From the NCBI GenBank assembly GCA_021613535.1, contig CP075495.1:12586001-12650000 (forward strand): a DNA stretch of 64,000 bases, given 5' to 3'. Shown here one piece after another: positions 3,076-61,208 of this stretch. Position numbers and translations under genes: made by a program. A model generated the notes under the pieces. It was not told the origin of the DNA and made no database searches. It saw nothing but the letters and a program-made list of their open reading frames with translations. Positions within the stretch are counted from its first letter, which is position 1. Every line of letters begins with the position of its first letter. The DNA comes from Adineta vaga. Its lineage: Eukaryota; Animalia; Rotifera.

Positions 3076-4637
3076 ATGTACCGAATAAGTTTATACAATC
3101 TTCTGATTTTATTCATTTTTTTACAAATTTTCTCAAAAATCCAATCTAACTCTTCAACAACAATTTCATCAATAGTGAATAATGAAACAATACCATTATT
3201 ATGTAGTTATTGTGAAACAAAGGCATGTCGTTGTTCTTCAACATATAATACTTTGAATTGTTCATCATATCTATTAAATTTAACATTTGCTTCAAATTGT
3301 GTAGAAAATCAAATTTGGAATCTCGTTGATTTTTCTTCACGTAATTTCGAATCATTCGATTCGACTCAACTTCTATCATTACGTATGTATCGTCTGTTAT
3401 TAAAATCAAATTTCATAATTAAAATATATGATCACGCATTTGATTCAATCGCTGATTCACTCATTGAACTTGATTTACAAATGAATCAAATATCAAATAT
3501 TTCATCAAAATGGTTCAATTCTAAATTTCATCGATTACAAATATTAAATCTTGCTTTAAATCAATTAGAAACATTTGACGATTTTGATCATATTCATTTA
3601 CCAGCTCTACGAGAATTAAATTTATCTGGAAATCAAATTGAATTCTTTCCAAAGCAAATTCATCAATGGATATCATTAACAAAACTTGATTTATCATTTA
3701 ATAAACTTTCTAGTATACCAAGATTTGCACTATTTGGTCTTCAAAATTTAAAATGGTTATCATTGGCATCGAATAGAAATTTAACTTGTAAATATTAATC
3801 AACAGAATATATCTCATTCGAATGTTTAATTTATATTTAGGTATTGTACAAGATTCATTTAAACATTTGAGATTATTAAATTATCTCGATTTATCAAGTA
3901 CAAATTTATTTACTGTTGATGGTTGTATTTTTCTTCAATTGATCAGTTTAAAAATATTGAAAATCGAACGTGTAACTATGAACTGTTCATCGTGTTGGTT
4001 ACCTATTGCAAGAAAGAATTCAATTCAATCGATTGGACAATGTCTTGATAATAGTACAATACATAATCTCAGTTCATTAACTGATCAACAACTCGATTCA
4101 TCATGTTCAAAATCATCTATTGATTGTTCTACAGACTCTTGTGAACCAGGTTCATTCAATATTGATTCAAAATCTCTTTCTTCAATGAGACAATTATCAA
4201 CTTTAGCTAAAAATTCTAATGCATCAAAAAATCGTACAATTGAAATTGTCCTTGCGATTATATTCAGTATAATTGCTTTGTTGATTATTATATTTATTGT
4301 TATTTTAGTCTATCGATGGAAGCAAGGTAAAAAATTATTATGTTGCAATTTATTCCCAGCATCATCCACAATGTTTGGAGTAGTACGACGCAATCGTCAT
4401 CAACATCAAAAACAAATTATAAATAACAATCCAACAATTATCGAATCCGTAGTTACACATGGAGCAAATATGGATGTTTCACCTTCATATGAATTAAGTT
4501 CGAATAATAAGCGAAAACTTTATAATCCGATGTTTACCGATACGCCATCAAACGACATGAATTCTCCACAATCATCAACAATTTTTTTGAATGAGAATCG
4601 CTTCCAAAAGAATCAATTACTTTCAGAAAATCTCTAA
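3076..4637 (+). CDS. Leucine-rich-repeat single-pass transmembrane protein (2 exons; intron 3788-3840)
   Basis: Signal peptide, Cys-rich LRRNT, multiple LxxLxLxxNxL repeats, Cys-rich LRRCT, TM helix (IVLAIIFSIIALLIIIFIVILV) and a cytoplasmic tail with LYNPMF. A GT..AG intron joins the 240 aa and 271 aa ORFs in frame. Confidence 0.85.
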
Positions 4638-4992
4638 CAAATTCGTATGTTTATGTGTGGAAGATGTATCGGATAGGTGAACGTGTATGTGTGTGTGTGA
4701 TTATAGAAGTTTAATAAATATACCTTGTATTGTTTTTCACTTACAGCAAAATGTATTTGAATGTATTTAAAAGAAAATAAAAGCGAAGAAAAGTAAAATG
4801 CAGACGGTTTAATTTTCAGAATAAAAACACTTTTGATTACAAGAAAACATTGAGAAAAAAAGAAGAGGTAAGTTGAGAAGTTGTTTTCATTTTGAAATCG
4901 AAAACAAAAAGACCATTTTATTACAATTATATTGGACGGTATAAATTTGCATTTTAGTTTTGTTTTCAATAAGGTTAAAGTTACAAACAAAT

Positions 4993-5538
4993 ATGAGTAC
5001 TCAACCTAATATGAATACTGATCATTGGAGTAAAATGCGTATGAATGTAAGCGATAGAATATTGTCTTTATGGTAATTTATTCTTTCATGTACATCAAAC
5101 AAATAGGTAATAAAAAGTGCGATTAATACAGAACAACGTGGACGGGTTCTCGTTTGGGAAAAACATCAACAAACAGCTGCACAACATGAATTGGAAGCTG
5201 CTATTCGTGGGACTCGTAGTCTACCACAATTTCGAGTTGGACGTGTCCATAATTTTCAAGATATTCTCAGAACTGAACTGAATGGTTATCTTCCTGGTTC
5301 TGCATATCTTCATCGACGAGCTGATCAATCTCGATTACCTTCGTTTGGACATCCGAAAAAACTTATCCATCGTAAGTAAAAAACGACTGATTATATTTGA
5401 TCTGTTTTCTCTTTATTTTCAGTTCGTCATCCATTATTGACTGGTTCTCGATATACTTTAATGACATTACCAACTGATCCTCGAAGTGATCAAACACGAA
5501 GTCGTGTGCCAGTTTTACAGTGTCGTGGAAAAATTTAA
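4993..5538 (+). CDS. Small basic protein of unknown function (3 exons), possibly a ciliary/microtubule-inner protein
   Basis: ATG 4993; introns gtaagc..aaatag (5047-5106) and gtaagt..ttcag (5372-5422) splice in frame to TAA at 5536-5538. Confidence 0.65.
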
Positions 5539-5666
5539 TTTCTTTTTTATTATATACCTATTCTTACACATACATCAAATAAACACGACAAAAAAAAAGT
5601 ATCTAAGAAATTCGTCATATACGTTTTTGTAAACAGTAATAAAAAAACATGAACTTTTCATTTCGA

Positions 5667-7027
5667 TTAATATAAGAAATCATCTAAGTTTTTTGATGGT
5701 TGTAAACCATTTGCTAATGAATAACGAATATTCCAACGAAGTGCTGAACGTTTTTTTGCTGTTGGTACAACATAATTATTCACACGTGGAGCAGATTTTC
5801 TCTGAGAAAAAAAACGAAAATATTTTCGATTAAGATAAGATCAGATCATAGAACTTACTTTAGCAGGAACATCTTTTTGTAAAAGTTGATCTCGAATAGC
5901 CCATCGTAAACTTTGATGAGATTTTTCTCCTGGTGCACGTTGCATTGCCCATTGTTGTTGATAATATGAATGAAGGTGAACTGTATCTATTCGATTATTT
6001 GAAAAACTCCGAGAACGACGAAGAGATGCTGTTGATGCTGTCGATGGACGAATAACTAATTATAGGAATAACAAAAAAATAATCAAATATTTTATACGTT
6101 TATTAAACATACATGATTTAACAGGAAGAACCGATGCTGTCGAACGAGTCTATTTCAAAGAAGAGAATAAATAAGAAAATTATAGTTAAATCTCTTACAT
6201 CATCACTGTAAGTCGAATGATTATCAATATCTGAGGCAGATTCAATTCGTCGACGAACTTGTTTCTGTTGATTGGGAAGATCATGTACATAACTAACATC
6301 ACGTGAATCAAGTACAGAACCTGTTTCTAAATAATGAAAACACATGATTATAATGATTCTAACATTTCTTTGTCTCCTTCATCCAACCTGATCTTGATTC
6401 ATCACATACAGTTGCTCTACCATTATAGTGTCTAAATAAAACTATTAAAAGTAAACTTCTCTTTTAATAAAATTATCTATTTACCGTAAAACTTTTCGTT
6501 TAATAATTCTTTGTGATGATGTATCACTTCGATTATCATCATCGTTCATTCGTGGATGATAACTTGATATACTTTAGAAGAATATTCAAAAAATTTAAAT
6601 AGAATAAAAATAAAATTACACTAACGTTGGTGTATTCGTTTCATCGAGACTTTCATCATCATCGTCATCTGGTTCATTTCGATTAAAATCATTATCTGAC
6701 GAACTTGGTTGATGCATCTAAATATTTAACTTTTCATTATAGTAAAAAAACACATGAGAATTGACTTTATTTACAGTAAAATCAACATTTGATTGTTGTT
6801 GAACGATTGATCGTTTACTTTCACGTGAATCTAATTAATTAAAGAAAATAAATGTTAGCGATATGGTCATAGGAGTTAAACTAAGTTCTACTTTGATTTT
6901 GATCATTTTGAGCAAGATCTTCAAGATCATTTTGAAATTTTAAAAGAGTTTGTTTTGATAAACTGTTATAACCTAACCGAGCAAGTTCAAGACGAATTTG
7001 TTCTAACGAAAAAGTACTTGTCGCCAT
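5667..7027 (-). CDS. HYLS1: Hydrolethalus syndrome protein 1 (centriole/basal body protein), multi-exon
   Basis: N-terminus [23 protein letters not shown]; C-terminal HYLS1 box [51 protein letters not shown]. Confidence 0.88.
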
Positions 7028-30902: not shown

Positions 30903-31227
30903 TTTACTCTTCAATTATTTGTTTATTTCTTTCCTTATCTACCAATCAAATCGGTGATCAGAATCTAGTTTGTTTTTTTTTCTTCACTTCATTTTGTTTT
31001 CATTCTTGATTTCTCTAATAACTGAATACTCACAACATATTTATTGTATACTCATATTTTGTATTCTTTTCTCTATTGTTCTATAACAGAAGAAAAGAAT
31101 TTTTGTTTGTACTTTTAAAAAAAGAATGCTCAATATTATATTTAGGAGAAGAAGAAAAAAAAGAGCAACAAGTCTTTTGGGAAATATAGATATCATTCTT
31201 ATTATTTGTTTGTTTATTAGATGTTCA

Positions 31228-31867
31228 ATGACGAGTTTAAATTTATGTCTTTATAAATCTATTCAACGTATTGCTTGTTTAAGCAAACGGTAAGAGATTG
31301 TCAAAGAAAAAAACGAATCAAATGAAAATAGTTTGAATTTCATTTATATGTATTGTTTAGTCAAACAATTCTAAACGTACGTTTCGTCTCGACAGCATTG
31401 CCTGAGAGTTGGTATAAACGTTTTCCACCAATTGACGAAAAAGATATCGAAGAAAAAGCGATTAAAGGTTCAGGACCCGGCGGTCAGGCAATAAATAAAA
31501 CACAAAATTGTTGTCAAATAAAGCACGTTCCCACAGGTAAGTTTATTATTGTCTTATATCTTCGTTATTAGATAATTAGAAAATGAAGAAATTCTTCTTT
31601 GTAGGTATTGTTGTTACATCTCAACAAACGCGTTTTTTGGAAAAGAATCGTTTATTAGCTCGTCGTCAATTGCAAGAGAAATTGGATGTTCATTATAACG
31701 GTGAACAAGGTCTTGTTGCTCAATATAAACGAGAAAGAAGTGAAAAACGAGAAGCACAACGTTTAGAAACAAAGAAAACGTTAGAAAAGAAGCGTGCTTT
31801 CAAATCTGAACAAGATACTTATTCCAATACAAATTATGATGATTCATCAGACCAATCAGTTAAATAA
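31228..31867 (+). CDS. MTRFR: Mitochondrial translation release factor in rescue (C12orf65), GGQ peptidyl-tRNA hydrolase; 3 exons
   Basis: Targeting peptide exon, then [59 protein letters not shown] and a basic C-terminal helix. Confidence 0.9.
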
Positions 31868-31874
31868 ACACATC

Positions 31875-33532
31875 ATGAATTATTCGACAAGAGAATGTCG
31901 AACACCAACGTGTGAAGAACTTAATTATGAGACGAGTCAAGTTAAATGTCCCCATCGTGAAAACAATACTTCCGGAGAAAAATGTCAGAAAATCTTTAAA
32001 AATATCATGGCACTCAATGTACATCTTCAAATGTACCATAAAGAAATAGGCATTCTTACAGTTAGTCAAAGATCTTATCGAACCATAATTTGTTTTATAA
32101 ATATGTTGAATTCTAGGCATTTAATAAATATATATCATACGTAGGTCGTTTTCATTGTCCGATTAAAAATTGTACATTCCATCGTTGTTATGGACAATGT
32201 AGTTTTCTTCCATGGTCATCATCATCATCATCATCATTCTCAAGTTTTAATGCCGTACGATTGGTTAGTGATATAATTGATCTTTTCGATGATGTAAATA
32301 ACTCAACAATTTTCTATTTGTCTATTCTAGCATTATTTACGACAACATGGTTTAAAAAAAGAACAATGTTCAAAATGTTCAAAATCATTTGGTCTTCATC
32401 AAGATTTCATCGCACATGAAAGAATGTTTGTAATAATTTTAAATTTGCAATTAATAAAGAAACGATAATTTTTTTCATTAGTTGTGGTATTCAATGTCCA
32501 TTTTCTTGTTCGAAGTGTCATGAACAATTTCATAATCGAACTAGTTTACGACGACATCAATTGAAATTCCATACAGATTCAAATAGAACTTCTCCTGTCA
32601 TAAAGTAGAAGACATTTCTTTTGTAGCTTCGAAATGGAATAAACGAATCTTCTTTCTATAATCATAGTTCTTCTTCTTTATTAAAACCGAAAGAATATCG
32701 AAAACGACTCAATCGTCGTCGTCCTCTTTCATCTGATCAAATTGAACTTTCTCGTCAAATTATTCCTTCAACTCCACATTCATCAGTCATTATTAATCCT
32801 CACGCTTTAGCCCTTCTTAAAACTTTCAAGTCTGATTCAACATCTCGTTCATCTACAATAGATTCATCTGTTACATTTGAATCCACTAATAATAAATCAA
32901 CTCAAACAACCAGTTATGTTTCTGTTGGAACAGAATGTTGTTCCTTTGCTTTATCACAATCAATATCAATGAAAGTAACTGAACAAAAATCCAGTCAAAC
33001 AATGAATCATAGTAGAATGTGTAAAAAACGAACAAGATATTCTCTGTCATCTTCAAATCATTCAAATACATCACAATGGAAAAATATTCATGTCATCGAT
33101 ATGGAAACACAAATAGCATCTCCATTACGTTCTGATATGTCTATTCAAACCATAAATATCGCTTCCGATTCATTAGATTTTTTACCTAAATCACCAGAAA
33201 ACCATCATAATGTTATCACTCAAACATTACCTATATCAATGACATCAACAGAAATGCAAACAATCAACGAAATATCCAACCAATGCAACAATTTAAATAA
33301 CTTTCCAGAACAAGAATCTGTTGGTACATCATGCTTTTTTGATGATTTCTTATTGAATGATTTAACATCCTCAGTATTCTCTGATTTGAATGTAATAGAT
33401 TTATTTGATTTTATTGATAATGGCACACAAACATATTCAACGCTAACTAATCATGAAACACAAACAGTAGCCGATTGGAATGACATAGTGATACCTGAAG
33501 ATGAATGTATTCAAACGATTATGAATACTTGA
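31875..33532 (+). CDS. ATMIN: ATM interactor / ASCIZ zinc-finger transcription factor; about 5 exons
   Basis: PTCEEL followed by four C2H2-type fingers (C..CQKIFKNIMALNVHLQMYH; FHCPIKNC..HYLRQH; CSKCSKSF..HERMC; CSKC..LRRHQLKFH) and a C-terminal array of LC8-binding TQT-like motifs (STQT, METQ, ITQT, GTQT, ETQT, CIQT). Confidence 0.85.
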
Positions 33533-51362: not shown

Positions 51363-53358
51363 GATAATGGTCAATGATTAGATGCAATAATCAAATGTTT
51401 ACTTCAAACTTTTAGAAAAGATATATTTTGTTCTTATCTAAAATAATGAAAATGTAAACTGATACGAAATCAACCCTCGATTATAAGTGATCTATCCAAT
51501 AGAAAGAGAAAAAGATATGAAGAAGAAATTTCAATCAATCAGTTACTTATTTTTATACTGTTTAGATTTTCTCTGCATTTGTAAATATATACCAAGCAGA
51601 AACTGACATTTACACATTTCTGCAATTCATATCTTTACCTAATTACCATACAGTATACGTGAACAAACTAACTAATAGACCAAATCTTTCTCTTGACTAC
51701 TACTTTTTGTTCTTCCTGTATAATGACGATGATGATGAAATCTTGGTTAAAAATCAATTAAGTGTCGGTCAACTTCATTTCGGTTTTCGAACGTCTATAT
51801 ATAACAATAACACCTACCAAATGTATATATACAAGCAACACAGCTTGGCTCGTAGTTTTGTTACGAGTATGTCTATATAGACGTACGTATATATGCATTT
51901 ACTGACGGCAAATAACATCAAGAACGATGTAAAATATTAGTTATTATTGACATTCGTACATACCTCCGGACAGAAGGTCGAAGAAGAAACTAAAAATATT
52001 GTTATTTGTATAGAAAGTTAGAATAGATTCAGTCAAGTAGCTCTTTGTTAGGTAGTATGTTCACTTTGATCATCCTATAAGTAGAAGAAGAATGATTGCG
52101 GTTTTCCCTCAATGTCAAACTTTTTCTATTCCTTCTTTTCTCTTTTTCTTTTTTCTCTGACAATAGTTATGTATGCATATATATATTACTACAACTACTC
52201 AGCGTAGGGCGATACTTTTTTTCTGATAGGAAACTTGGAGCTGTGTGCGTGTGTACGATGCTTTTGGTTGTCTTTCTCTCAGTGATAGAACGCCCGAGAA
52301 AAAGAGAGAAAATGCATGCGAATAAAGAAAGAAACAGAAAGAAGAAAAAGAAAAGAAAACTCCCTACCCGCTTCGCACTTTTTGCCCTAGTACAATATTA
52401 AAAAAACGACAGAAAAGAGAAAAGAAAAAGAACTGTGAACGATAAAATGAAGAGAGCTACTCATTGAGTTTGCTTACGTAAAAATAGGACAACATCTCTA
52501 TCATTTTTCAAGTCAAAATGGTCTGTTTTGTTTCTTTCCCTTTAGAGACAAAGCATGTACATTTATGATCAAATCAAGGTTGAGAATAAAGATGTAGACG
52601 CCCATTGAAATGATTTATATACGAGAAACTGGTAAATATATGTAACAGCTGTTCTGACCAGTAAGGAATTGATGCGTAGCTTGATATGAAACATCTTACC
52701 AACACACCAGAGAATAAAAATAAAGAACATACAAAACTATTATTACATCAACTCAATGATGTGATGATTTTGATAAAAAAAAAGAAAAGAAATGAAAGTA
52801 GAACCCATTTACCATCTTTCTTTTTGATTTTCTTGTTAACATTGATAGGTTTTCTTACAAAGTTGATGATTAAAATATATCAACACTTCAATCTTGAAGC
52901 CTATGTATGAAATATACATAAATGTTTGCAACGAAGAAATTACTATTTAAAAATGAATAAATTAATCCTTTGAAAATTCTCTACTATATTTAATTTTGAA
53001 ATAGTAAAAATGAAAGTTTTTTTCTCTTCTAACGATAAATAAATTGTCTCAAACATGTTATATAATAATAAACACAGATTTAAAATAGTGTAACAAAGTG
53101 AGTATAGTACAATCGTGTTCTACTGTCTCACCATAGATGATGTACAATAAATTTGATCTATGTGAATAAGAATAAAAATACAATCATTGATCTAAAGCGA
53201 CCTCTAACCGATGAAACTAAGACTGTTTCTCAAGTTAAACCAATCACGTGATTCGTTGTTACAGAAACAGTGAAAGTTTTCTTTTCTTTCTTCTGCTGTT
53301 TGTGTACTTGCTGAAATATAACGAAAATCTTTTCCAAACATATTTTAACAATTTTGTA

Positions 53359-54237
53359 ATGGATGTTTCAACGGGTGTTGCTCCTCCTGCATCTGCACAA
53401 CCACAATTGAACACAACATTTACTGGTCAAAATACAATCTATGTAAACAATCTCAATGAACGTAAGTTCTTCAAAAGATTAATTTCCATCGATTTTTCTT
53501 TCTGTTAATTTATAGGTGTCAAAATTCCTGAATTAAAAAAATGTCTCTACGCAATCTTTTCGAAATTTGGTAAAATTATTGACATTGTTGCTTTGAAAAA
53601 TTTACGTATGCGTGGACAAGCATTTATTATATTTGATCAACCAGATAGTGCTGCACAAGCATTAACATCAATGCAATCATTTCCATTATATGATAAACCA
53701 TTACGAATACAATTTTCTAAATCAGATAGTGATTTAATTTCAAAACGTAAAAATACTTTTGTTGAACGACCAAAACGTCGTAATGATACAGATTCACCAT
53801 CGATATCGAAGAAAGAAAAACGTCGTCAACAATTAGCTGCTAAACAAGAACAACAACGTTTAATGAAAGCACAAATGGCAGCACAATTTCCCGGCTTACC
53901 AGCTGGTATGCCACCCATGATGCCTGGCATGCCATCGATGATGATTCCACCTCCACCGATGATAAATCGACCAGTTCTACATCCACCTATATTCGGTGGT
54001 GAAATGCCAAATAATATTCTATTTCTATCAAATATTCAAGATGCAAATGAAAGCATGTTAACAACATTATTCAAAGGTTATAGTGGTTTTCGTGAAGTTC
54101 GTCTCATTCCTGGTCGTGAAGGTATTGCCTTCGTTGAATTTGATCTCGAACATCAAGCAGCAATGGCCAAAGATGGTTTACAAGGTTTTAAAGTTACACC
54201 TGACAAAGCAATGATGATTACGTTTGCTAAAAAATAA
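53359..54237 (+). CDS. U1A/U2B''/SNF-family snRNP protein, copy 1 (2 exons; intron about 53462-53515)
   Basis: RRM1 TIYVNNLNE..LYAIFSKFGKIIDIVALKNLRMRGQAFIIF, Pro/Met-rich linker, RRM2 PNNILFLSN..FREVRLIPGREGIAFVEF..MMITFAKK. Confidence 0.92.
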
Positions 54238-54367
54238 CTTTTTTTTCCCATTTCGTTATTGTGTTTTCTCTTTCTTCTTCTTTCTTTCTTTTTTATTACT
54301 GTTATAAACACGAAACAAAAGGAAAATAAATGTACAACTCTGGTCATGTTTTGTTTTTTTGTTCTAG

Positions 54368-55398
54368 ATGTCGACTAATACAGATCAACCAATGGCAATG
54401 ACGACAATAACGAATACATCAGCATCGCTGTCAAACTCTATTCCACCAAATCATACACTTTATGTGAATAATTTAAATGGAAAAATTAAGAAACAACAAT
54501 TAAGAAAATCTCTTTATAATCTATTTGTTACTTATGGTCGTGTTGTTGCTGTTGTTGCTATAAAAGGTGTCAAAATGCGTGGTCAAGCATTTATCGTTTT
54601 TGATGATATACAAAATGCAACTAGTGCATTACGTTCATTACAAAGTGTTGTGTTCTATGATAAACCTATGCGTTTATCATATGCTAAACGTGATTCTGAT
54701 GCAATACGATATTCCAAAGAACAAATTGCTGAAAAGACAGCTGCATTAGCTGCAACAAGTCAACCCGAACCTAAACAACGTAAAGAGAAACCTCGTATAC
54801 CACCACCACCAACTCAACCACCACCAGAACGTGCTATTCACGAACAGCATATAGGTAAGATTAACAGCTTTCAAAACAAAATGATACTAGTGATCATAAA
54901 CACTTATTTCTTTGTTATCAATTTTTAGCAATGATGAATTCTGAAGAAGTTAATCGTGCTGCTAATGCTGTTGCTGCAGCAGAAGCTGAATTACAAGAAT
55001 TACCATTACGTGATCGTACACGTCGCATTCAATCGGTAATTGCTGCACAAACAACATTGATCGGTACAGCTGTTCCAATGATGACTGAAGTGCAATCAAA
55101 CTCAACACTTTTCATCACAAATATACCTAATGAAACAACTAAGGATGCATTAGAAATATTATTTCGTCAATTTTTAGGTTATCTTGATGTACGACTTGTT
55201 CCTGGACGTGAAGGTATTGCTTTTGTTGATTTTGATAATGAAGTAGGTGCTGCTTCTGCACGAGGTAAATTCTTTATTAATCAAATTTAATAATTCATTT
55301 TAATATGATTTTTTCTCTTGAAATTTTCTCTAGATGCTCTCAATGGTTTTAAAATCTCAGCAACAAATGCAATATCAGTTAGTTTCGCAAAGAAATAA
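54368..55398 (+). CDS. U1A/U2B''/SNF-family snRNP protein, copy 2 (divergent; 3 exons)
   Basis: RRM1 PPNHTLYVNNLNGKIKKQQLRKSLY..AVVAIKGVKMRGQAFIVF; RRM2 STLFITNIP..DVRLVPGREGIAFVDF..ISVSFAKK. Confidence 0.9.
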
Positions 55399-55651
55399 GA
55401 AAGAAATGAGATTTCCATTATGTTTTTTTTATACATGAAACTTTGATGAAGTCGAAGTGTATACTTCGTGTTTTGTTGTTGTGTTATTTTATAAAAATAA
55501 AAAAAGTAAGGTCGTCTTTTGAAAGAGCGCCTAAAACTGACATTGAACAGATACTGATACACAGATATAACTATCATAAATGTTTAGCTTTCTGTAAATA
55601 GTAAGATGATTTCTATTTTAGATTGTTTGATTTTCATTAATTTCGAATTCA

Positions 55652-56074
55652 ATGAATACATTAGAAAGTCAAAACGATCGGCAATCGGATGAATTAGCTG
55701 CTAAAGTCTCTCGACTTAAACATGTTTGTTATTAATAACTATTTCTCTTCTCTTGAAAATAATCTTTGTTCATTATGTTTTTTAAGATTGCATTTGATAT
55801 TGAAAATGAAACAAAAGAACATAATCGTTTTCTTGAAACAATGGTAAATGAAAAATCCAAGGATAGAAATAAATCATTCCTTTTTTATTTCTTTCAATTC
55901 TAGCGTTTCGATTTCAATACTGCACGTAGTTTTCTTGGTGGTAGTTCTCGTCATTTAGGCAATGTTATGTCTAGTGGACGAGGTGATCGTCGAGCAATGT
56001 GTTACATAGCAGGAGCTATAATTCTTGCGTTTTTGTTTCTCTATTATGTTGTGAGTTCATTTCGTACTAAGTAA
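55652..56074 (+). CDS. BET1L: BET1-like Golgi Qc-SNARE (GS15); 3 exons
   Basis: LESQNDRQSDELAAKVSRLKHIAFDIENETKEHNRFLETM..FLGGSSRHL..SGRGDRRAMCY plus a C-terminal TM helix; introns gtttgt..aag and gtaaat..tag. Confidence 0.85.
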
Positions 56075-56243
56075 TATAAAATTTTTAATCTGTATATATA
56101 CAAATAAACATCTGTTATCAGAGATGAATTTAGCGAAGATCGAGTATTCATCTTTCGTTTGATTTTCTCCTTTTATTCTGTTTTTTTTTGGTGTTCAAAT
56201 AAGAAACAAAGTTATCTATATATGTTATACGTGGGTTCTAGAT

Positions 56244-58529
56244 ATGAATCTTTTGCGTCGTCCTTTACCTCCTCGTCTTCGTCCATTATTACTCAGTGAC
56301 ATATCAAATGGACGAGCTGAATCTTTATCACCACTTTCATCAGCATCTACTTCAACAAATAATTCACCTCGATCATCTCGACCATCGAGTCATACACGTT
56401 CACCACGTTATCTACCACCATTGAACGAAGAAGATAGTCGTCATATAAATCTCACTATACGATCTCAACAAGAACAATCGTCCAATGATAATCAATTGAC
56501 TGTATCAACAAAAGCTCACAAAAAACCTGAGAAGGAAGATAGTGCTGATGATGATAGTGAAGATGAAAGAGAGAAAAAAACAAGAAGATTATTAACACCA
56601 CTTAAACCACGTGTATATTCACAATTCAGTGGAATACATCGTTCAGCTACTTCGACAAAAGCACGATCACTTCTTCGAACACCAAAATATAAAGGACCAC
56701 CTGGTTTACCAGCTAGACGAACACGTACTTTCTGTGATGTTAAAACTCATTATACAAATATTACCGATGATAATGCTTATAATGTCGATAATCGATTTAC
56801 TTTTAATGATTTTATTCTTAATTCATCGAGATTAAATGGTCATTCATATGAAGAAACAGTAGTAGAAAAAGCGTTTCTATCGAAATATACTTATAAACAA
56901 ATCTGTGAAATGATTGCTGAACGTGTTTGGGCAGAAAGACGAGAAGGTGGACAAGTAAGTTCGAATAAATACAAATGAATTTCAAAATAATCTCTTATAC
57001 TATTAAAGATTCATGTACAAACATTAGTACCTGATATAGAACCATTTCAAAATCGAATACCAATGCATCAAATTATAGCTGAAATGGCTTTAGTTCTTCG
57101 ACAACATATGTCACACATATTCGGTAATTTATGATTTGACAAATCATATTGAACTCTTTTTCTCATCCTAGGTTCTCAATTGAAAATGAATATCCGAACA
57201 TTACCAAGTTGGCGACAGAAAGAAGGTGCACATACAGAAATTCTTCTTTATGAAAAAGAAAATAACAAAAAATCATCAGAAATTCTACAAGAAACCGATG
57301 GTAAAGTAAACTCGATTGACTATTCGACTAATGTATTTTCATTATCTTAGAATCATTCGATTATCGACGTGATACGGGTGCTCAAATAGCGATTCTAGAT
57401 AGTTTAATTAAAAATGGAACACATTTAGATTTACGTGCTTTTACATTGGAATATTTACCTGATATCTCATTGATGTATACTACATTAGTTGCTATTGATC
57501 TATCATACAATTGTTTTCAAGTAAGATAATAGATAAAGATGAAATGAATTCAAAATATTTATCGTACTTTTTGTTGTTGTTGTGTTCTTAAGACTGTTCC
57601 AGAAGAATTATTCGAATGTGTAAAACTTGAACATCTCTATTTACGTCATAATCCAATTTCATCAATCTCATCAGGAATGAAGAATTTGAAAACGCTCGTT
57701 TTTCTTGACATGTCATTCTGTCAATTAAATGGTATTCTAACTGAAAAGTATGTAAAGAAATCGAAAAAAAAGATACAAATCAATCTTTTATATTACTTTC
57801 ATTAGTTTATTTGGATTAATTAATCTTCGACATTTGGATATATCATATAATCTTATCAAAACTATTCCAAGTGGTATATCGAATTTAAAGTAAAGATTTT
57901 CTTTTCTTCACTAAGATTATTTTCAATTTTTATTTCTCACAGAAATCTTCGACAATTGCTTTGTGATGGAAATGAAATCACTCATTGTCCATCAAGTATA
58001 ATTTCAATGACTAATCTTCGATTGATTACTGCAAAAAATACATGGCTTTTACCTCCATTAGCTGACCATGAAAATTCAACAAAACCTCAAGTAATATTTG
58101 ATTCATATCAATTCTATACTCATTTCTATCATTCTAGAAATTGCTTGAATTAGTCACTCATCGTTACAGTCAATTTTATTGGAAAGATTTATACCATAAA
58201 ATTCCTGAATCATCAAAGATATTACTTGCCAAGTAAGTCACATCTATTCTCTGACGAAAACAAATCGAACTATTATTGTTTTGAATATGTTTAGTGCACA
58301 ATTATGTGATTCTTGTTCGAGCTTACGTATAGGCAATGGTATTCGTAAAATTATTATATGTGAAAATTTCGTTGGTATTAAATCATTACCAATACTTTTT
58401 GTCAGTTGTACACCAGAATGTATACAAAGATTTCTCTCTGATAAACTTCCAAGTACTACAATTCCGTCCAAAGATACTTATATTATTAATGATCAATTTA
58501 TTTCTCACCTCAAAACACGTCATATGTGA
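56244..58529 (+). CDS. Intracellular leucine-rich-repeat protein, LRRC63-like, multi-exon
   Basis: Low-complexity N-terminus, AILDSLIKNGTHLDLRAFYI, LRRs (IDLSYNCF, LYLRHNPI, LDMSFCQL, LDISYNLI) and C-terminal CDSC..G.G..FVGIKSLPILFVSCTPEC. Confidence 0.75.
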
Positions 58530-58653
58530 TAAAACATATTTTGTTTTTTAAACTATTTTACACTACTAATATTAACAGTTTATATATACATATAAATATA
58601 ATCTCACGAATGATCTTTTCTTTTTCTAGATATATAGATATAAAAGAACAACA

Positions 58654-59078
58654 ATGAAATTAATTACACATAATATGTTGACATCAAATATTCTCAAAGG
58701 TGTTTCAAAAGGTTTTCCATTGAAAATACAAAATGCCAAAGTTGAAAATGTTTCCGTTGATTACAATAAAGATTTTATTAGTCGAATTCTTCAACGCATT
58801 GAATATGATGCACTTCGAGCAGCTATTAAAGATGTATGTTTAACTTTTCCAATGTAAATTATCAGATTTTCTTTTTTCAGTTGGGTTTGAATGAATCATT
58901 ACCTGAATCAATGACAGACAGTATGCAAGATGATGAAGAATTTTTGAAAACAATGCATCGTATTCTACTTGAATATGAAATTGAAGAAGGTGAACTCATC
59001 TGTCCGGAAACTGGTAGATCATTTCCAATCTCTAAAGGTATACCAAATATGTTATTACAAGAAACTGAAATATCATAA
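58654..59078 (+). CDS. TRMT112: Multifunctional methyltransferase subunit TRM112 (2 exons; intron 58834-58880)
   Basis: MKLITHNMLTS..GFPLKI..FLKTMHRILLEYEIEEGELICPETGRSFPISKGIPNMLL. Confidence 0.96.
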
Positions 59079-59242
59079 TCAATGATTTCGTTGTAATCAT
59101 TATTTGTTATTGTTGATCAAATAAAAAAAAAGAAAAAAGAAATCAAAAAAGAAAATGAATGTTGTTGTTTCGTGTATTGCTTTATCTAAACTGAAACGTT
59201 TTACAAAGAGCATTGTATATTGTAGACTAAATTCTCTAAGAT

Positions 59243-60337
59243 ATGAATGATCATTCGTTACCTTGTAAATCGAAAACATCCTTGTCACAAGAATCAGTAA
59301 CGAAAAATGTCAATCAAATCTGTCAGTTATATTCATTTGAAATGATACCTGAATATCTTCAATCAAATCCTTATATACGAACAGGTTATCGATATGGTTT
59401 AACATTCAAAGGCTGTTTAGTCAGGTAATAATGTGTGTAAATAATTCATATAATCTATCTATGTATGATTTCGATGAAATAGTTTATTGTATGTGAATAA
59501 TGAATCGGTGAATGTTTGGTCACATTTAATTGGTGCTGGTCTTTTTATTTATTTTTTCTTTTGTGATATTTATAAAGGCAAAATTTTTCCTTCGATAACA
59601 ACAACAACTGATTATTATTTTCTATTATTTTATACATTTACAGTCATAGTAAATCTTTACTTCTCAAAAGATGTTATTTTATTTAAGATCTCTTCTTTTC
59701 TCTTCTATCATAGACATGTATGTTATGTTCAGTAGTATTTCATCTCTTCAATTGTATTTCATCACGAGCATTTGCTGATTTTCTCAAATTAGATTACTGT
59801 GGTATCGGCTTTGGTATTCTCGGTTCTTATTTATGTGGTCTTCATTTAACATTTCATTGTTATCATAATTGGAGAATACGATATGAAACATTGATTATTG
59901 GTATCATATTTATTGCGGTAATTTATTATATTCATGGAGTTAAACGATATATAACACGAAATATTCATGTCACTTTATTTGTAACTATCTCATTATTTGG
60001 TATTATACCAAGTTTACATTGGTATTATCTTGAAGGTGGCTGGTCAAATCCATTTGTACAACATTTCTTTCCAAAAATACTTATTCTCTATGGAATATTA
60101 ACTATTGGTGTTCTGGCTTATTTGACAAAATTTCCCGAGAGATTGTTTCCCGGTAGGATCATTATAGCCTCAATACAGACACTTGATATGTTGTTTTTAG
60201 GTTGTTTTGATATTTTATTTGCAAGTCATCAGATCTGGCATTTTGCATCATTAGCAGCATTTATATGGTGGTATAAAAATGGTATTGAATTAATGCACTA
60301 TCGTCTGATAAATCCCTGTGGTGCTCAATCAAAATAG
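59243..60337 (+). CDS. PAQR3: Progestin and adipoQ receptor family member 3; about 4 exons
   Basis: IPEYLQSNPYIRTGYR, NESVNVWSHLIG, CSVVFHLFNC, KLDYCGI, KFPERLFPG, SHQIWH. Confidence 0.9.
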
Positions 60338-61208
60338 ATCAAACGTTTTTAAACCTGTTTTTCTTTAGTTAGAATGAACGTTGAACGTATCCTTCCACGA
60401 ATAGTTTTATTAGATTTACTTACATGTTTTTTTTGTGATAAGTATATTGTGTAATGTACTGATCTATTTTTTTTCACATACTTTTGAGAATAAAAATAAA
60501 CGTATTTAGTCTGTTTTAACTAACAAAGGAGAATCGATATATCGAAGTGTTGTAATATCACTTTCCTATATTTGATCTTTTAAGATTTGAAATGATCGAA
60601 TCTATGATTCTGTTCGATATGATTGAAGTTTTATCATATGAAACAATAAATTTTAATGAACATGGTTAATCTTTTCAACTATTACAAATTACAGGTAAGA
60701 TAATTATTGTTCGATCGCATGAGTTTGATATTTTTACTTTAATGTTTGATAAGTTTGAAAGTATAAGCTATGATGTTCTGATATAAGATTGATGCATAAG
60801 TCAAAATTGTAACATATCGTTTTCATTTAAATAGTTCTTGTTGTTCTTTGGTAACATAGAGAAAATACACGTATATTTCATTCAATATTATAGTCTCTGC
60901 GTGATTAAAATAGTCACAAGTTATCATCGATGAACAAAAACAATCGTAACTTTCTTTACTATAGCATTAAATTGTAAGAAAAATAGCAGCGCAAAACTTA
61001 TATACTATAGATTCTTAATAGTAATAAGGTACTGAAAAAGCATTTTTATTATTTAAAAACATCGATTTTTGTATAGGTTCACGATAAGATCAGAAGGCTA
61101 AAGTACACGCATGACACAGAGATGATATGACATAAGTACGAGATCGAGAATATGTAATGGATATATATATATACCAGTAAGTCATCCAGAACGGACGTAA
61201 GTATATGA

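What the first reader, a model, noticed from the sequence alone, without database searches (positions are those of the whole stretch)
53359..60337. Six-gene operon-like cluster (U1A/U2B'' x2, BET1L, LRRC63-like, TRMT112, PAQR3) with trans-splice-type junctions
Seen: six co-directional genes with stop-to-ATG gaps of 130, 253, 169, 124 and 164 nt. Four of the five gaps contain AATAAA (54325, 55496, 56103, 59120). Each has a T-rich stretch and an acceptor-like AG at or just before the next start: gttctag|ATG (54367), tattttag| (55621), ttctag|atATG (56241), ttttctag| (58629), ctaag|atATG (59240). In the first gap the poly(A) signal is only about 37 nt from the acceptor, leaving no room for a promoter. 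Only the first gene has a long upstream region. Known: bdelloid rotifers use spliced-leader trans-splicing, and in nematodes and tunicates this architecture marks polycistronic operons of housekeeping genes. Inference: a rotifer operon resolved by coupled 3'-end formation and SL addition; I am not aware of such operons being well characterised in this group.
Basis: partly seen in the sequence, partly recalled or inferred. Interest (0 to 1): 0.85.

Follow-up and report, generated by a model that had tools for sequence, protein, structure and literature searches.

The report
Spliced-leader operon candidate in Adineta vaga
Six unrelated housekeeping genes of the bdelloid rotifer Adineta vaga lie head to tail only 124-253 bases apart. 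RNA from close relatives shows the first two are made as one transcript and separated by polyadenylation plus spliced-leader addition, an operon of a kind not yet described in rotifers.

Summary
Six co-directional genes lie at 53359-60337: U1A-like, U2B''-like, a small BET1-like SNARE, an LRR protein, Trm112 and PAQR3-like. The gaps are exactly 130, 253, 169, 124 and 164 nt.

The window is Adineta vaga, whose genome carries 42 spliced-leader (SL) RNA gene copies. All RNA evidence comes from contigs of three related bdelloids, and it covers junction 1 only:
- Three intron-less contigs run through genes 1 and 2 and the gap between them.
- Two gene-1 mRNA contigs end 12-14 nt after AATAAA, about 23 nt before the acceptor.
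- One gene-2 cDNA has the last 10 nt of the SL joined directly to the ATG. Its sister contig has the genomic outron there.

Junctions 2-5 rest on comparison alone:
- Every acceptor is conserved in Adineta steineri and Rotaria.
- The gaps hold invariant blocks of 17-32 nt; the introns hold none.
- An ancient duplicate on another chromosome keeps BET1-Trm112-PAQR with gaps of about 92 and 83 nt.

The fifth acceptor is more likely at 59225 than at 59240.

Verdict: a probable SL-resolved operon, good for genes 1-2 and inferred for genes 3-6. This scan noted a similar candidate elsewhere in the same genome.

The parts
53237..53297 (+). Candidate promoter and 5' UTR start of gene 1. A CCAAT box at 53240-53244 lies within a block conserved with Rotaria.
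   Evidence: alignment. Gene-1 RNA contigs of a relative start at positions matching about 53278-53295 and carry no SL.
53359..54237 (+). Gene 1, U1A/U2B''-family snRNP protein (274 aa in relatives), with one intron at 53462-53515.
   Evidence: Pfam RRM_1. Spliced cDNA contigs lack exactly this intron.
54325..54367 (+). Junction 1. AATAAA lies at 54325-54330. The inferred cleavage site is about 54342-54343. A 21-nt invariant GU/U-rich block lies at 54336-54356. The acceptor AG at 54366-54367 abuts the ATG.
   Evidence: Gene-1 mRNA contigs L031 and L032 end 12-14 nt after the hexamer. The block is invariant in three genomes. The SL tail sits on the ATG in L025, against the genomic outron in L028.
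54368..55398 (+). Gene 2, U2B''-like snRNP protein (about 294 aa), with introns at 54855-54928 and 55265-55333.
   Evidence: Pfam RRM_1 twice. JGI names a relative U2 snRNP B''. The introns are absent from cDNA contigs.
55474..55621 (+). Junction 2. A 17-nt invariant block lies at 55474-55490, AATAAA at 55496-55501, a 32-nt invariant block at 55517-55548, and the conserved acceptor AG at 55620-55621, 30 nt before the ATG.
   Evidence: The 32-nt block is unique in the genome. Spliced gene-2 RNA contigs of relatives run through it, L015 for about 95 nt past AATAAA.
55652..56074 (+). Gene 3, a 99-aa tail-anchored BET1-like Qc-SNARE (weak assignment), with two introns.
   Evidence: A 99-aa gene is called at this position in A. 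steineri and Rotaria. The SNARE match is weak.
56103..56241 (+). Junction 3. AATAAA lies at 56103-56108. The conserved acceptor AG at 56240-56241 is 2 nt before the ATG.
   Evidence: The run 56239-56254 is invariant in three genomes. No RNA evidence.
56244..58529 (+). Gene 4, a leucine-rich-repeat protein (about 620 aa, eight introns). It is absent from the duplicate cluster on C5 and from contig L019.
   Evidence: Pfam LRR. Orthologues of 619-621 aa. Single copy in the genome.
58600..58629 (+). Junction 4. A conserved branch-point-like motif lies at 58600-58607, followed by a T tract and the acceptor AG at 58628-58629, 24 nt before the ATG. There is no AATAAA, only TATAAA-like variants just upstream.
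   Evidence: The same motif plus acceptor occurs in A. steineri, Rotaria and L019. No RNA evidence. A TATA-type promoter reading is not excluded.
58654..59078 (+). Gene 5, Trm112 methyltransferase activator subunit (125 aa), with one intron at 58834-58880.
   Evidence: Pfam Trm112p. Source names.
59120..59240 (+). Junction 5. AATAAA lies at 59120-59125. The conserved acceptor AG is at 59224-59225, 17 nt before the ATG.
   Evidence: The gap length varies: 164 nt here, 458 in A. steineri and 243 in Rotaria. No RNA evidence.
59243..60337 (+). Gene 6, PAQR3-like seven-pass membrane protein (307 aa; A. vaga I4U23_009694), with three introns. Terminal AATAAA copies lie at 60489 and 60495.
   Evidence: Pfam HlyIII. 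P0164 and orthologue names.

Best explanation
The cluster is most likely a spliced-leader-type operon.

Proposed mechanism:
1. Transcription starts at one promoter near 53240-53295 and runs through several, probably all six, genes.
2. Each upstream cistron is cleaved and polyadenylated shortly after its poly(A) signal.
3. The next cistron receives the 23-nt bdelloid SL at a polypyrimidine-AG acceptor 0-30 nt before its ATG. This supplies the cap.

Shown, in relatives and for junction 1 only: co-transcription of genes 1 and 2, a gene-1 3' end about 23 nt before the acceptor, and SL addition exactly at the AG that abuts the gene-2 ATG.

Inferred: that A. vaga does the same, and that junctions 2-5 work the same way. 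Supplementary internal promoters are possible.

The genome shows one SL exon type, not a dedicated downstream leader. In leader use the system therefore resembles tunicate, flatworm and chaetognath operons. Its 100-130 nt spacing from poly(A) signal to acceptor at junctions 2, 3 and 5 is closer to the C. elegans spacing, as I recall it.
For: SL machinery. The genome has 42 SL RNA gene copies, against 0 for the reversed control. The exon is followed directly by a GT donor.

Dicistronic RNA. L013 and L027 (two JGI samples) and L030 (a Logan run) carry the gene-1 and gene-2 coding sequence with all three introns removed and gap 1 retained.

Gene-1 3' ends. The monocistronic gene-1 contigs L031 and L032 end 12-14 nt after AATAAA.

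SL junction. L025 reads TTACCAAGAG directly on the ATG. L028, from the same species, reads the genomic T-rich outron ending in TAG, and the two are identical downstream. That 10-mer occurs nowhere else in the non-SL loci or in the window.

First gene. Gene-1 contigs have an 82-95 nt 5' UTR without SL, downstream of a conserved CCAAT block.

Read-through past gene 2. Spliced gene-2 RNAs continue past the gene-2 AATAAA.

Conservation. All acceptors are conserved between Adinetidae and Philodinidae. Three-way identity is 54% in the gaps against 40% in the introns. Invariant runs of 17-32 nt occur only in the gaps.

Ancient duplicate. The cluster on chromosome C5 keeps BET1-like, Trm112 and PAQR in the same order, with gaps of about 92 and 83 nt and T-rich AG acceptors.

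Boundaries. The cluster is flanked by an opposite-strand innexin gene upstream and about 2.4 kb of spacer downstream.
Against:
- No SL junction or spanning RNA was found for genes 3-6.
- The SL evidence is a single contig holding only 10 SL bases, fused to a fold-back artefact. Six of the ten bases are shared with the artefact arm.
- Dicistronic contigs could be read-through by-products.
- Synteny extends to the flanking genes (fumarase, PhyH-like, innexin, ABC transporter), so conserved order is not specific to the cluster.
- Gap 2 (253 nt, with a 32-nt invariant block), gap 4 (a conserved TATAAA-like stretch) and gap 5 (164-458 nt across species) could hold promoters.
- In the C5 duplicate, BET1-like is the first gene, so that gene can be expressed without the snRNP genes upstream.
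- AATAAA enrichment is modest.
Confidence: 0.55

Rival explanations
1. Partial or hybrid operon. Genes 1 and 2 (perhaps 3) are co-transcribed and resolved by SL trans-splicing. Some downstream genes, most likely BET1-like, Trm112 or PAQR, are driven mainly by their own promoters in gaps 2, 4 or 5 and are trans-spliced as ordinary outron-bearing transcripts.
For: - All RNA evidence concerns junction 1.
- Gap 2 is the longest and holds a unique 32-nt invariant block.
- Gap 4 has a conserved TATAAA-like stretch about 35 nt before the acceptor.
- Gap 5 tolerates a roughly 300-nt insertion in A. steineri.
- In the C5 duplicate, BET1-like heads the cluster with over 1 kb of non-coding DNA upstream.
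Against: - Spliced gene-2 RNAs of relatives read well into gap 2.
- Gaps 3 and 4 are short.
- The C5 duplicate has even shorter gaps of about 92 and 83 nt, which leave little room for promoters.
- No promoter-like motif is shared with the gene-1 upstream block.
Confidence: 0.3
2. No functional operon. This is simply a compact stretch of independently transcribed genes. The dicistronic RNAs are low-level read-through joined by assemblers, and SL addition only trims each gene's own short outron.
For: Bdelloid micro-synteny is conserved beyond the cluster. AATAAA and AG motifs are frequent in AT-rich DNA. More than half of bdelloid transcripts are trans-spliced in any case (PMC1925144, citing Pouchkina-Stantcheva and Tunnacliffe 2005).
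Against: - Only about 23 nt separate the gene-1 3' end from the gene-2 acceptor, which abuts the ATG. A gene-2 promoter would have to lie inside gene 1.
- Dicistronic spliced contigs recur in two JGI samples and an independent Logan run.
- The gaps are more conserved than the introns.
- The duplicate cluster has stayed tight since the ancient genome duplication.
Confidence: 0.1
3. The AGs are acceptors of cis-spliced 5'-UTR introns whose first exons lie upstream. One candidate donor is the 5'-splice-site-like sequence at 55506, which could pair with the AG at 55621.
For: A GTAAG-type donor at 55506 lies 116 nt before the junction-2 acceptor. An AAG|GT core is conserved there in relatives.
Against: RNA contigs of three relatives are collinear with the genome through that donor. 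At junction 1 the sequence joined to the acceptor is the SL tail, not an upstream exon. The other gaps have no comparable donor.
Confidence: 0.03

Closest known systems
Caenorhabditis elegans SL2-type operons
   Same: Closely spaced same-strand housekeeping genes. The upstream gene forms its 3' end shortly before a trans-splice acceptor. A U-rich stretch lies between the two sites. The distance from poly(A) signal to acceptor is about 100-130 nt at junctions 2, 3 and 5, close to the roughly 100-nt worm spacing as I recall it.
   Different: No dedicated downstream leader was found: all 42 copies matching the published SL exon within one mismatch are identical. More divergent leaders were not searched for. 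Junction 1 is much tighter, about 23 nt from cleavage site to acceptor. The phylum is different, and the origin is presumably independent.
Tunicate (Ciona, Oikopleura) and flatworm operons with a single SL
   Same: One SL serves both ordinary trans-spliced genes and downstream operon genes. Intercistronic distances are very short, as at junction 1.
   Different: As I recall, Ciona operons typically have almost no intercistronic region. Here junctions 2, 3 and 5 keep 100-130 nt between signal and acceptor.
Chaetognath operons (PMC12460157)
   Same: Chaetognaths are gnathiferan relatives of rotifers. Their operons are defined as same-strand genes less than 250 bp apart with SL addition, have no operon-specific leader, and are enriched in housekeeping functions.
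   Different: That paper validates operons genome-wide with RNA data. For rotifers, the literature I could search reports none (PMC7986045; 'ND' in PMC2481426).
Other operon candidate noted by this scan in the same genome (s1-489498)
   Same: Five unrelated genes lie 74-140 nt apart. The follow-up reported SL joined to at least two downstream genes.
   Different: It is a different locus with different genes, and I did not re-test it. It is a lead, not independent support.

Membership tests
SL-resolved eukaryotic operon | Two or more same-strand genes separated by very short intergenic distances | tested here: met
   The gaps are 130, 253, 169, 124 and 164 nt. Flanking spacers are far longer, about 2.4 kb downstream.
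SL-resolved eukaryotic operon | Co-transcription as a polycistronic precursor | tested here: inconclusive
   Met for genes 1-2 in a related Adineta species: three intron-less dicistronic contigs from two JGI samples and one Logan run. Not tested in A. vaga, and not seen for genes 3-6. The only hint there is gene-2 RNA running about 95 nt into gap 2.
SL-resolved eukaryotic operon | The downstream gene receives the spliced leader at an acceptor just upstream of its ATG | tested here: inconclusive
   Met for gene 2 in one relative. L025 has the last 10 SL bases on the ATG, and L028 has the genomic outron. This is one contig with an artefactual 5' part. Nothing was found for genes 3-6 (searches gave 0 hits).
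SL-resolved eukaryotic operon | 3'-end formation of the upstream gene close to the trans-splice site | tested here: met
   Gene-1 mRNA contigs end 12-14 nt after AATAAA, which corresponds to about 23 nt before the acceptor (mapping). This is in relatives and is inferred from contig ends, not from poly(A) tails.
SL-resolved eukaryotic operon | SL RNA genes present in the genome | tested here: met
   42 copies, 0 in the reversed control, with the exon followed by a GT donor.
SL-resolved eukaryotic operon | No independent promoters for the downstream genes | not testable with these tools
   This needs cap-selective TSS data or promoter deletion.
C. elegans SL2-type operon specifically | A specialised second leader used for downstream genes | tested here: not met
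   A search with the published SL exon at up to one mismatch found a single exon sequence in all 42 copies. More divergent leaders were not searched for.

The most novel reading that the evidence does not exclude
Bdelloid rotifers have true SL-resolved operons that are older than their ancient genome duplication and are kept intact across families.

In this one, the two snRNP genes at the head carry locus-specific invariant elements around their poly(A) signals (54336-54356, 55474-55490 and 55517-55548). These could set the balance between polyadenylation and read-through into the downstream cistrons. Feedback by the encoded U1A/U2B'' proteins is possible, by analogy with the vertebrate U1A polyadenylation-inhibition element.
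Probability: 0.12. Interest if true: 0.8.

Novelty: new member of a known kind. Interest (0 to 1): 0.62.

Why it matters
SL trans-splicing has been known in bdelloids since 2005. In the papers I could search, operons in rotifers are listed as not determined (PMC2481426) or not reported (PMC7986045).

A documented rotifer operon would add a phylum to the short list with polycistronic nuclear transcription. It would allow comparison with chaetognaths, the other gnathiferans known to have operons. It would also bear on two open ideas: that operons follow whenever SL trans-splicing evolves, and that they help recovery from arrested states, which is relevant to desiccation-tolerant bdelloids.

There is a practical side too. 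Gene predictors already fuse neighbours in these clusters: fumarase with U1A in A. steineri, and BET1-like with PAQR in Rotaria sordida. Recognising operons would improve annotation.

Tried and rejected
Reads.
- Local scripts did include that stretch in an alignment and in motif counts. One printed conserved run, 59110-59126, overlaps it.

Lookups and scans that gave nothing.
- A. vaga records are withheld from the look-up of encoding contigs.
- An SL (14 nt) plus gene-2 start pattern in metagenome contigs gave 0 hits. It was too long to catch L025, which holds only 10 SL bases.
- A cDNA-specific exon 1/exon 2 junction pattern for the BET1-like gene gave 0 hits.
- The SL in viral contigs gave 0 hits.
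- Rfam on 52600-59112 gave nothing significant.

Contigs that did not help.
- The Trm112 and PAQR protein searches returned almost only genomic exon ORFs and no usable cDNA contigs.
- L026 is a chimera with a ribosomal protein cDNA.
- L019 and L022 are genomic.

Structure of the gap-2 conserved blocks.
- The single-sequence fold is no better than shuffles (z = -0.39).
- The alignment fold has no covariation in the stem that would enclose the poly(A) signal.
- A third species breaks two of its pairs on my reading.
- I therefore make no claim of RNA structure.

Ideas rejected.
- A C/D snoRNA reading of the gene-2 3' UTR fails, because the box C match is not conserved.
- Synteny as operon-specific evidence fails, because the flanks are syntenic too.

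Method note. Exons were always searched separately by reference.
Full report
**What is there**

The stretch 53359-60337 carries six genes on the + strand with short introns of 47-74 nt. Pfam confirms two RRM-type snRNP proteins, an LRR protein, Trm112 and a HlyIII/PAQR protein. Names that public sources give to orthologues agree: U2 snRNP B'', TRM112 and PAQR family member 3.

Gene 3 encodes a 99-aa tail-anchored protein with only a weak SNARE-motif match. 'BET1-like' is therefore plausible but not firm. 'LRRC63-like' was not tested.

The stop-to-ATG gaps are 130, 253, 169, 124 and 164 nt. AATAAA starts at 54325, 55496, 56103 and 59120. AGs preceded by T-rich sequence end at 54367, 55621, 56241, 58629 and 59240.

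AATAAA in four of five gaps is only modestly unusual, with 90 of 5000 shuffles reaching it.

All exons were searched separately by reference. I built no joined protein.

**Organism and leader**

The window is G000:C2:12586001-12650000 of a 100.8-Mb, six-contig assembly. Gene 6 matches Adineta vaga protein I4U23_009694.

The published rotifer SL exon (PMC3795323, Table 1) occurs 42 times in the genome with one mismatch at its first base. The reversed control gives none. In the gene the exon is followed directly by a GT donor. The trans-splicing machinery is therefore present.

**RNA evidence and its limits**

A. vaga records are also withheld from the contig look-up. All RNA evidence therefore comes from three related bdelloid species and covers junction 1:

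- **Dicistronic RNA.** Contigs L013 and L027 (two JGI samples) and L030 (a Logan run) belong to a species about 84% identical in coding DNA. They carry gene 1 and gene 2 with all three introns removed and the intergenic gap retained. Block boundaries fall exactly at 53462/53516, 54854/54929 and 55264/55334. These are spliced dicistronic RNAs.
- **Gene-1 3' ends.** The monocistronic gene-1 contigs L031 and L032 end 12-14 nt after AATAAA. In the window this corresponds to about 54342-54343, some 23 nt before the acceptor.
- **SL junction.** In a second species, cDNA contig L025 reads the last ten bases of the SL directly on the gene-2 ATG. Sister contig L028 reads the genomic T-rich outron ending in TAG at the same place. 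The two are identical downstream.
- **First gene.** Gene-1 contigs carry an 82-95 nt 5' UTR without SL. It begins just downstream of a CCAAT-containing block conserved with Rotaria, as expected for the promoter-proximal gene.
- **Read-through past gene 2.** Spliced gene-2 RNAs continue past the gene-2 AATAAA, one of them for about 95 nt.

The first 80 bases of L025 are an inverted copy of its own coding region, a typical cDNA fold-back artefact. Six of the ten SL bases are shared with that arm, so this evidence is good but thin. The ten-base SL tail occurs nowhere else in the non-SL loci or in the window.

**Comparative evidence for junctions 2-5**

The same six genes occur in the same order and orientation in Adineta steineri and Rotaria sp. 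Silwood1, which belong to different families. This alone is weak. The flanking genes (fumarase, a PhyH-like gene, innexin, ABC transporter) are also syntenic with Rotaria.

The fine structure is more telling:

- In a three-way alignment the gaps are 54% identical, against 40% for the introns.
- The gaps contain invariant runs of 17-32 nt at 54336-54356, 55474-55490, 55517-55548 and 56239-56254, plus one around the gene-5 poly(A) signal.
- No intron contains a run of 14 nt or more.
- Rotaria lacks the AG at 59240. All three genomes share the AG ending at 59225.

An ancient duplicate of part of the cluster survives on chromosome C5. It runs BET1-like, Trm112, PAQR in the same order, with gaps of only about 92 and 83 nt, each with a T-rich AG acceptor before the ATG. 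It has no LRR gene and no snRNP genes. A metagenomic rotifer contig, L019, shows the same LRR-less arrangement. Tight linkage has thus survived in both copies.

**Interpretation**

Junction 1 meets the usual operational criteria for an SL-type operon:

- a very short gap;
- polycistronic spliced RNA;
- an upstream 3' end just before the acceptor;
- SL on the downstream gene.

With about 23 nt between the cleavage site and an acceptor that abuts the ATG, a separate gene-2 promoter would have to lie inside gene 1.

For junctions 2-5 the model is inferred. Internal promoters remain possible, for three reasons:

- Gap 2 has a unique 32-nt invariant block.
- Gap 4 has a conserved TATAAA-like stretch.
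- Gap 5 varies from 164 to 458 nt between species.

In the C5 copy, BET1-like is the first gene, so it can be expressed without the snRNP genes upstream.

My estimates are about 0.55 that all six genes form one polycistronic unit, 0.3 for a partial or hybrid operon, and 0.1 for no functional operon.

**Comparison with known systems**

The system works like the known SL-resolved operons. It uses one leader type, as tunicates, flatworms and chaetognaths do, rather than a dedicated SL2. The 100-130 nt from poly(A) signal to acceptor at junctions 2, 3 and 5 recalls C. elegans, while junction 1 is much tighter.

In the literature I could search:

- Operons in rotifers are 'ND' (PMC2481426).
- Operons in rotifers are 'not reported' (PMC7986045).
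- A 2025 paper lists rotifers loosely among lineages with trans-splicing and operonic transcription, without data (PMC12460157).

The original 2005 SL paper is not held.

This scan has already noted another operon candidate in the same genome (s1-489498). I did not re-test it.

**Verdict**

This is a new member of a known kind: an SL operon in a phylum where none is characterised. The decisive test is to map A. vaga SL-bearing and long RNA reads onto the five acceptors, which I could not do.

Noticed in passing
window 55474-55548: Two invariant blocks (17 nt and 32 nt) flank the gene-2 AATAAA. Both are unique in the genome. The downstream block begins with a 5'-splice-site-like AAG|GT and contains CAUUGAAC, one base off the U1A/U2B'' loop motif AUUGCAC (motif recalled from memory). 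The two blocks can pair so as to enclose the poly(A) signal, but without covariation and with z = -0.39. Their function is unknown.
   Followed up: partly
L029 (G000:C5:7079000-7088999), minus strand, about 3880-5980: An ancient duplicate mini-cluster: BET1-like, Trm112 and PAQR with gaps of about 92 and 83 nt. It has no LRR gene and no U1A/U2B'' genes, and more than 1 kb of non-coding DNA lies upstream of BET1-like.
   Followed up: partly
L019 (ENA metagenome contig), 1-1425: A genomic contig of another rotifer shows a U2B''-like last exon, then BET1-like, then Trm112 only about 65 nt after the BET1 stop. There is no LRR gene. The LRR gene was therefore either inserted into one duplicate or lost from the other.
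   Followed up: no
G000, 42 sites listed (e.g. L001-L012): SL RNA genes often sit in head-to-head pairs about 154 nt apart and in local arrays, notably on C5 near 9.88-9.93 Mb and 10.91-10.93 Mb. The genomic first base is T where the published exon has G.
   Followed up: no
L017 7812-9888; protein P0175: Public gene models fuse neighbours around this cluster: fumarase with U1A in A. steineri, and the BET1-like N-terminus with PAQR in Rotaria sordida. These are probably annotation artefacts of the very short gaps.
   Followed up: partly
L025 1-86: Bases 1-80 of this cDNA contig are the reverse complement of its own 363-444, joined to the SL tail at a 6-nt microhomology. This looks like a cDNA fold-back artefact.
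   Followed up: yes
window 31200-32060: A first-stage note (s1-508338) reports two genes whose stop and start are only 7 nt apart. This may be another co-transcribed pair in the same window.
   Followed up: no
   Followed up: no
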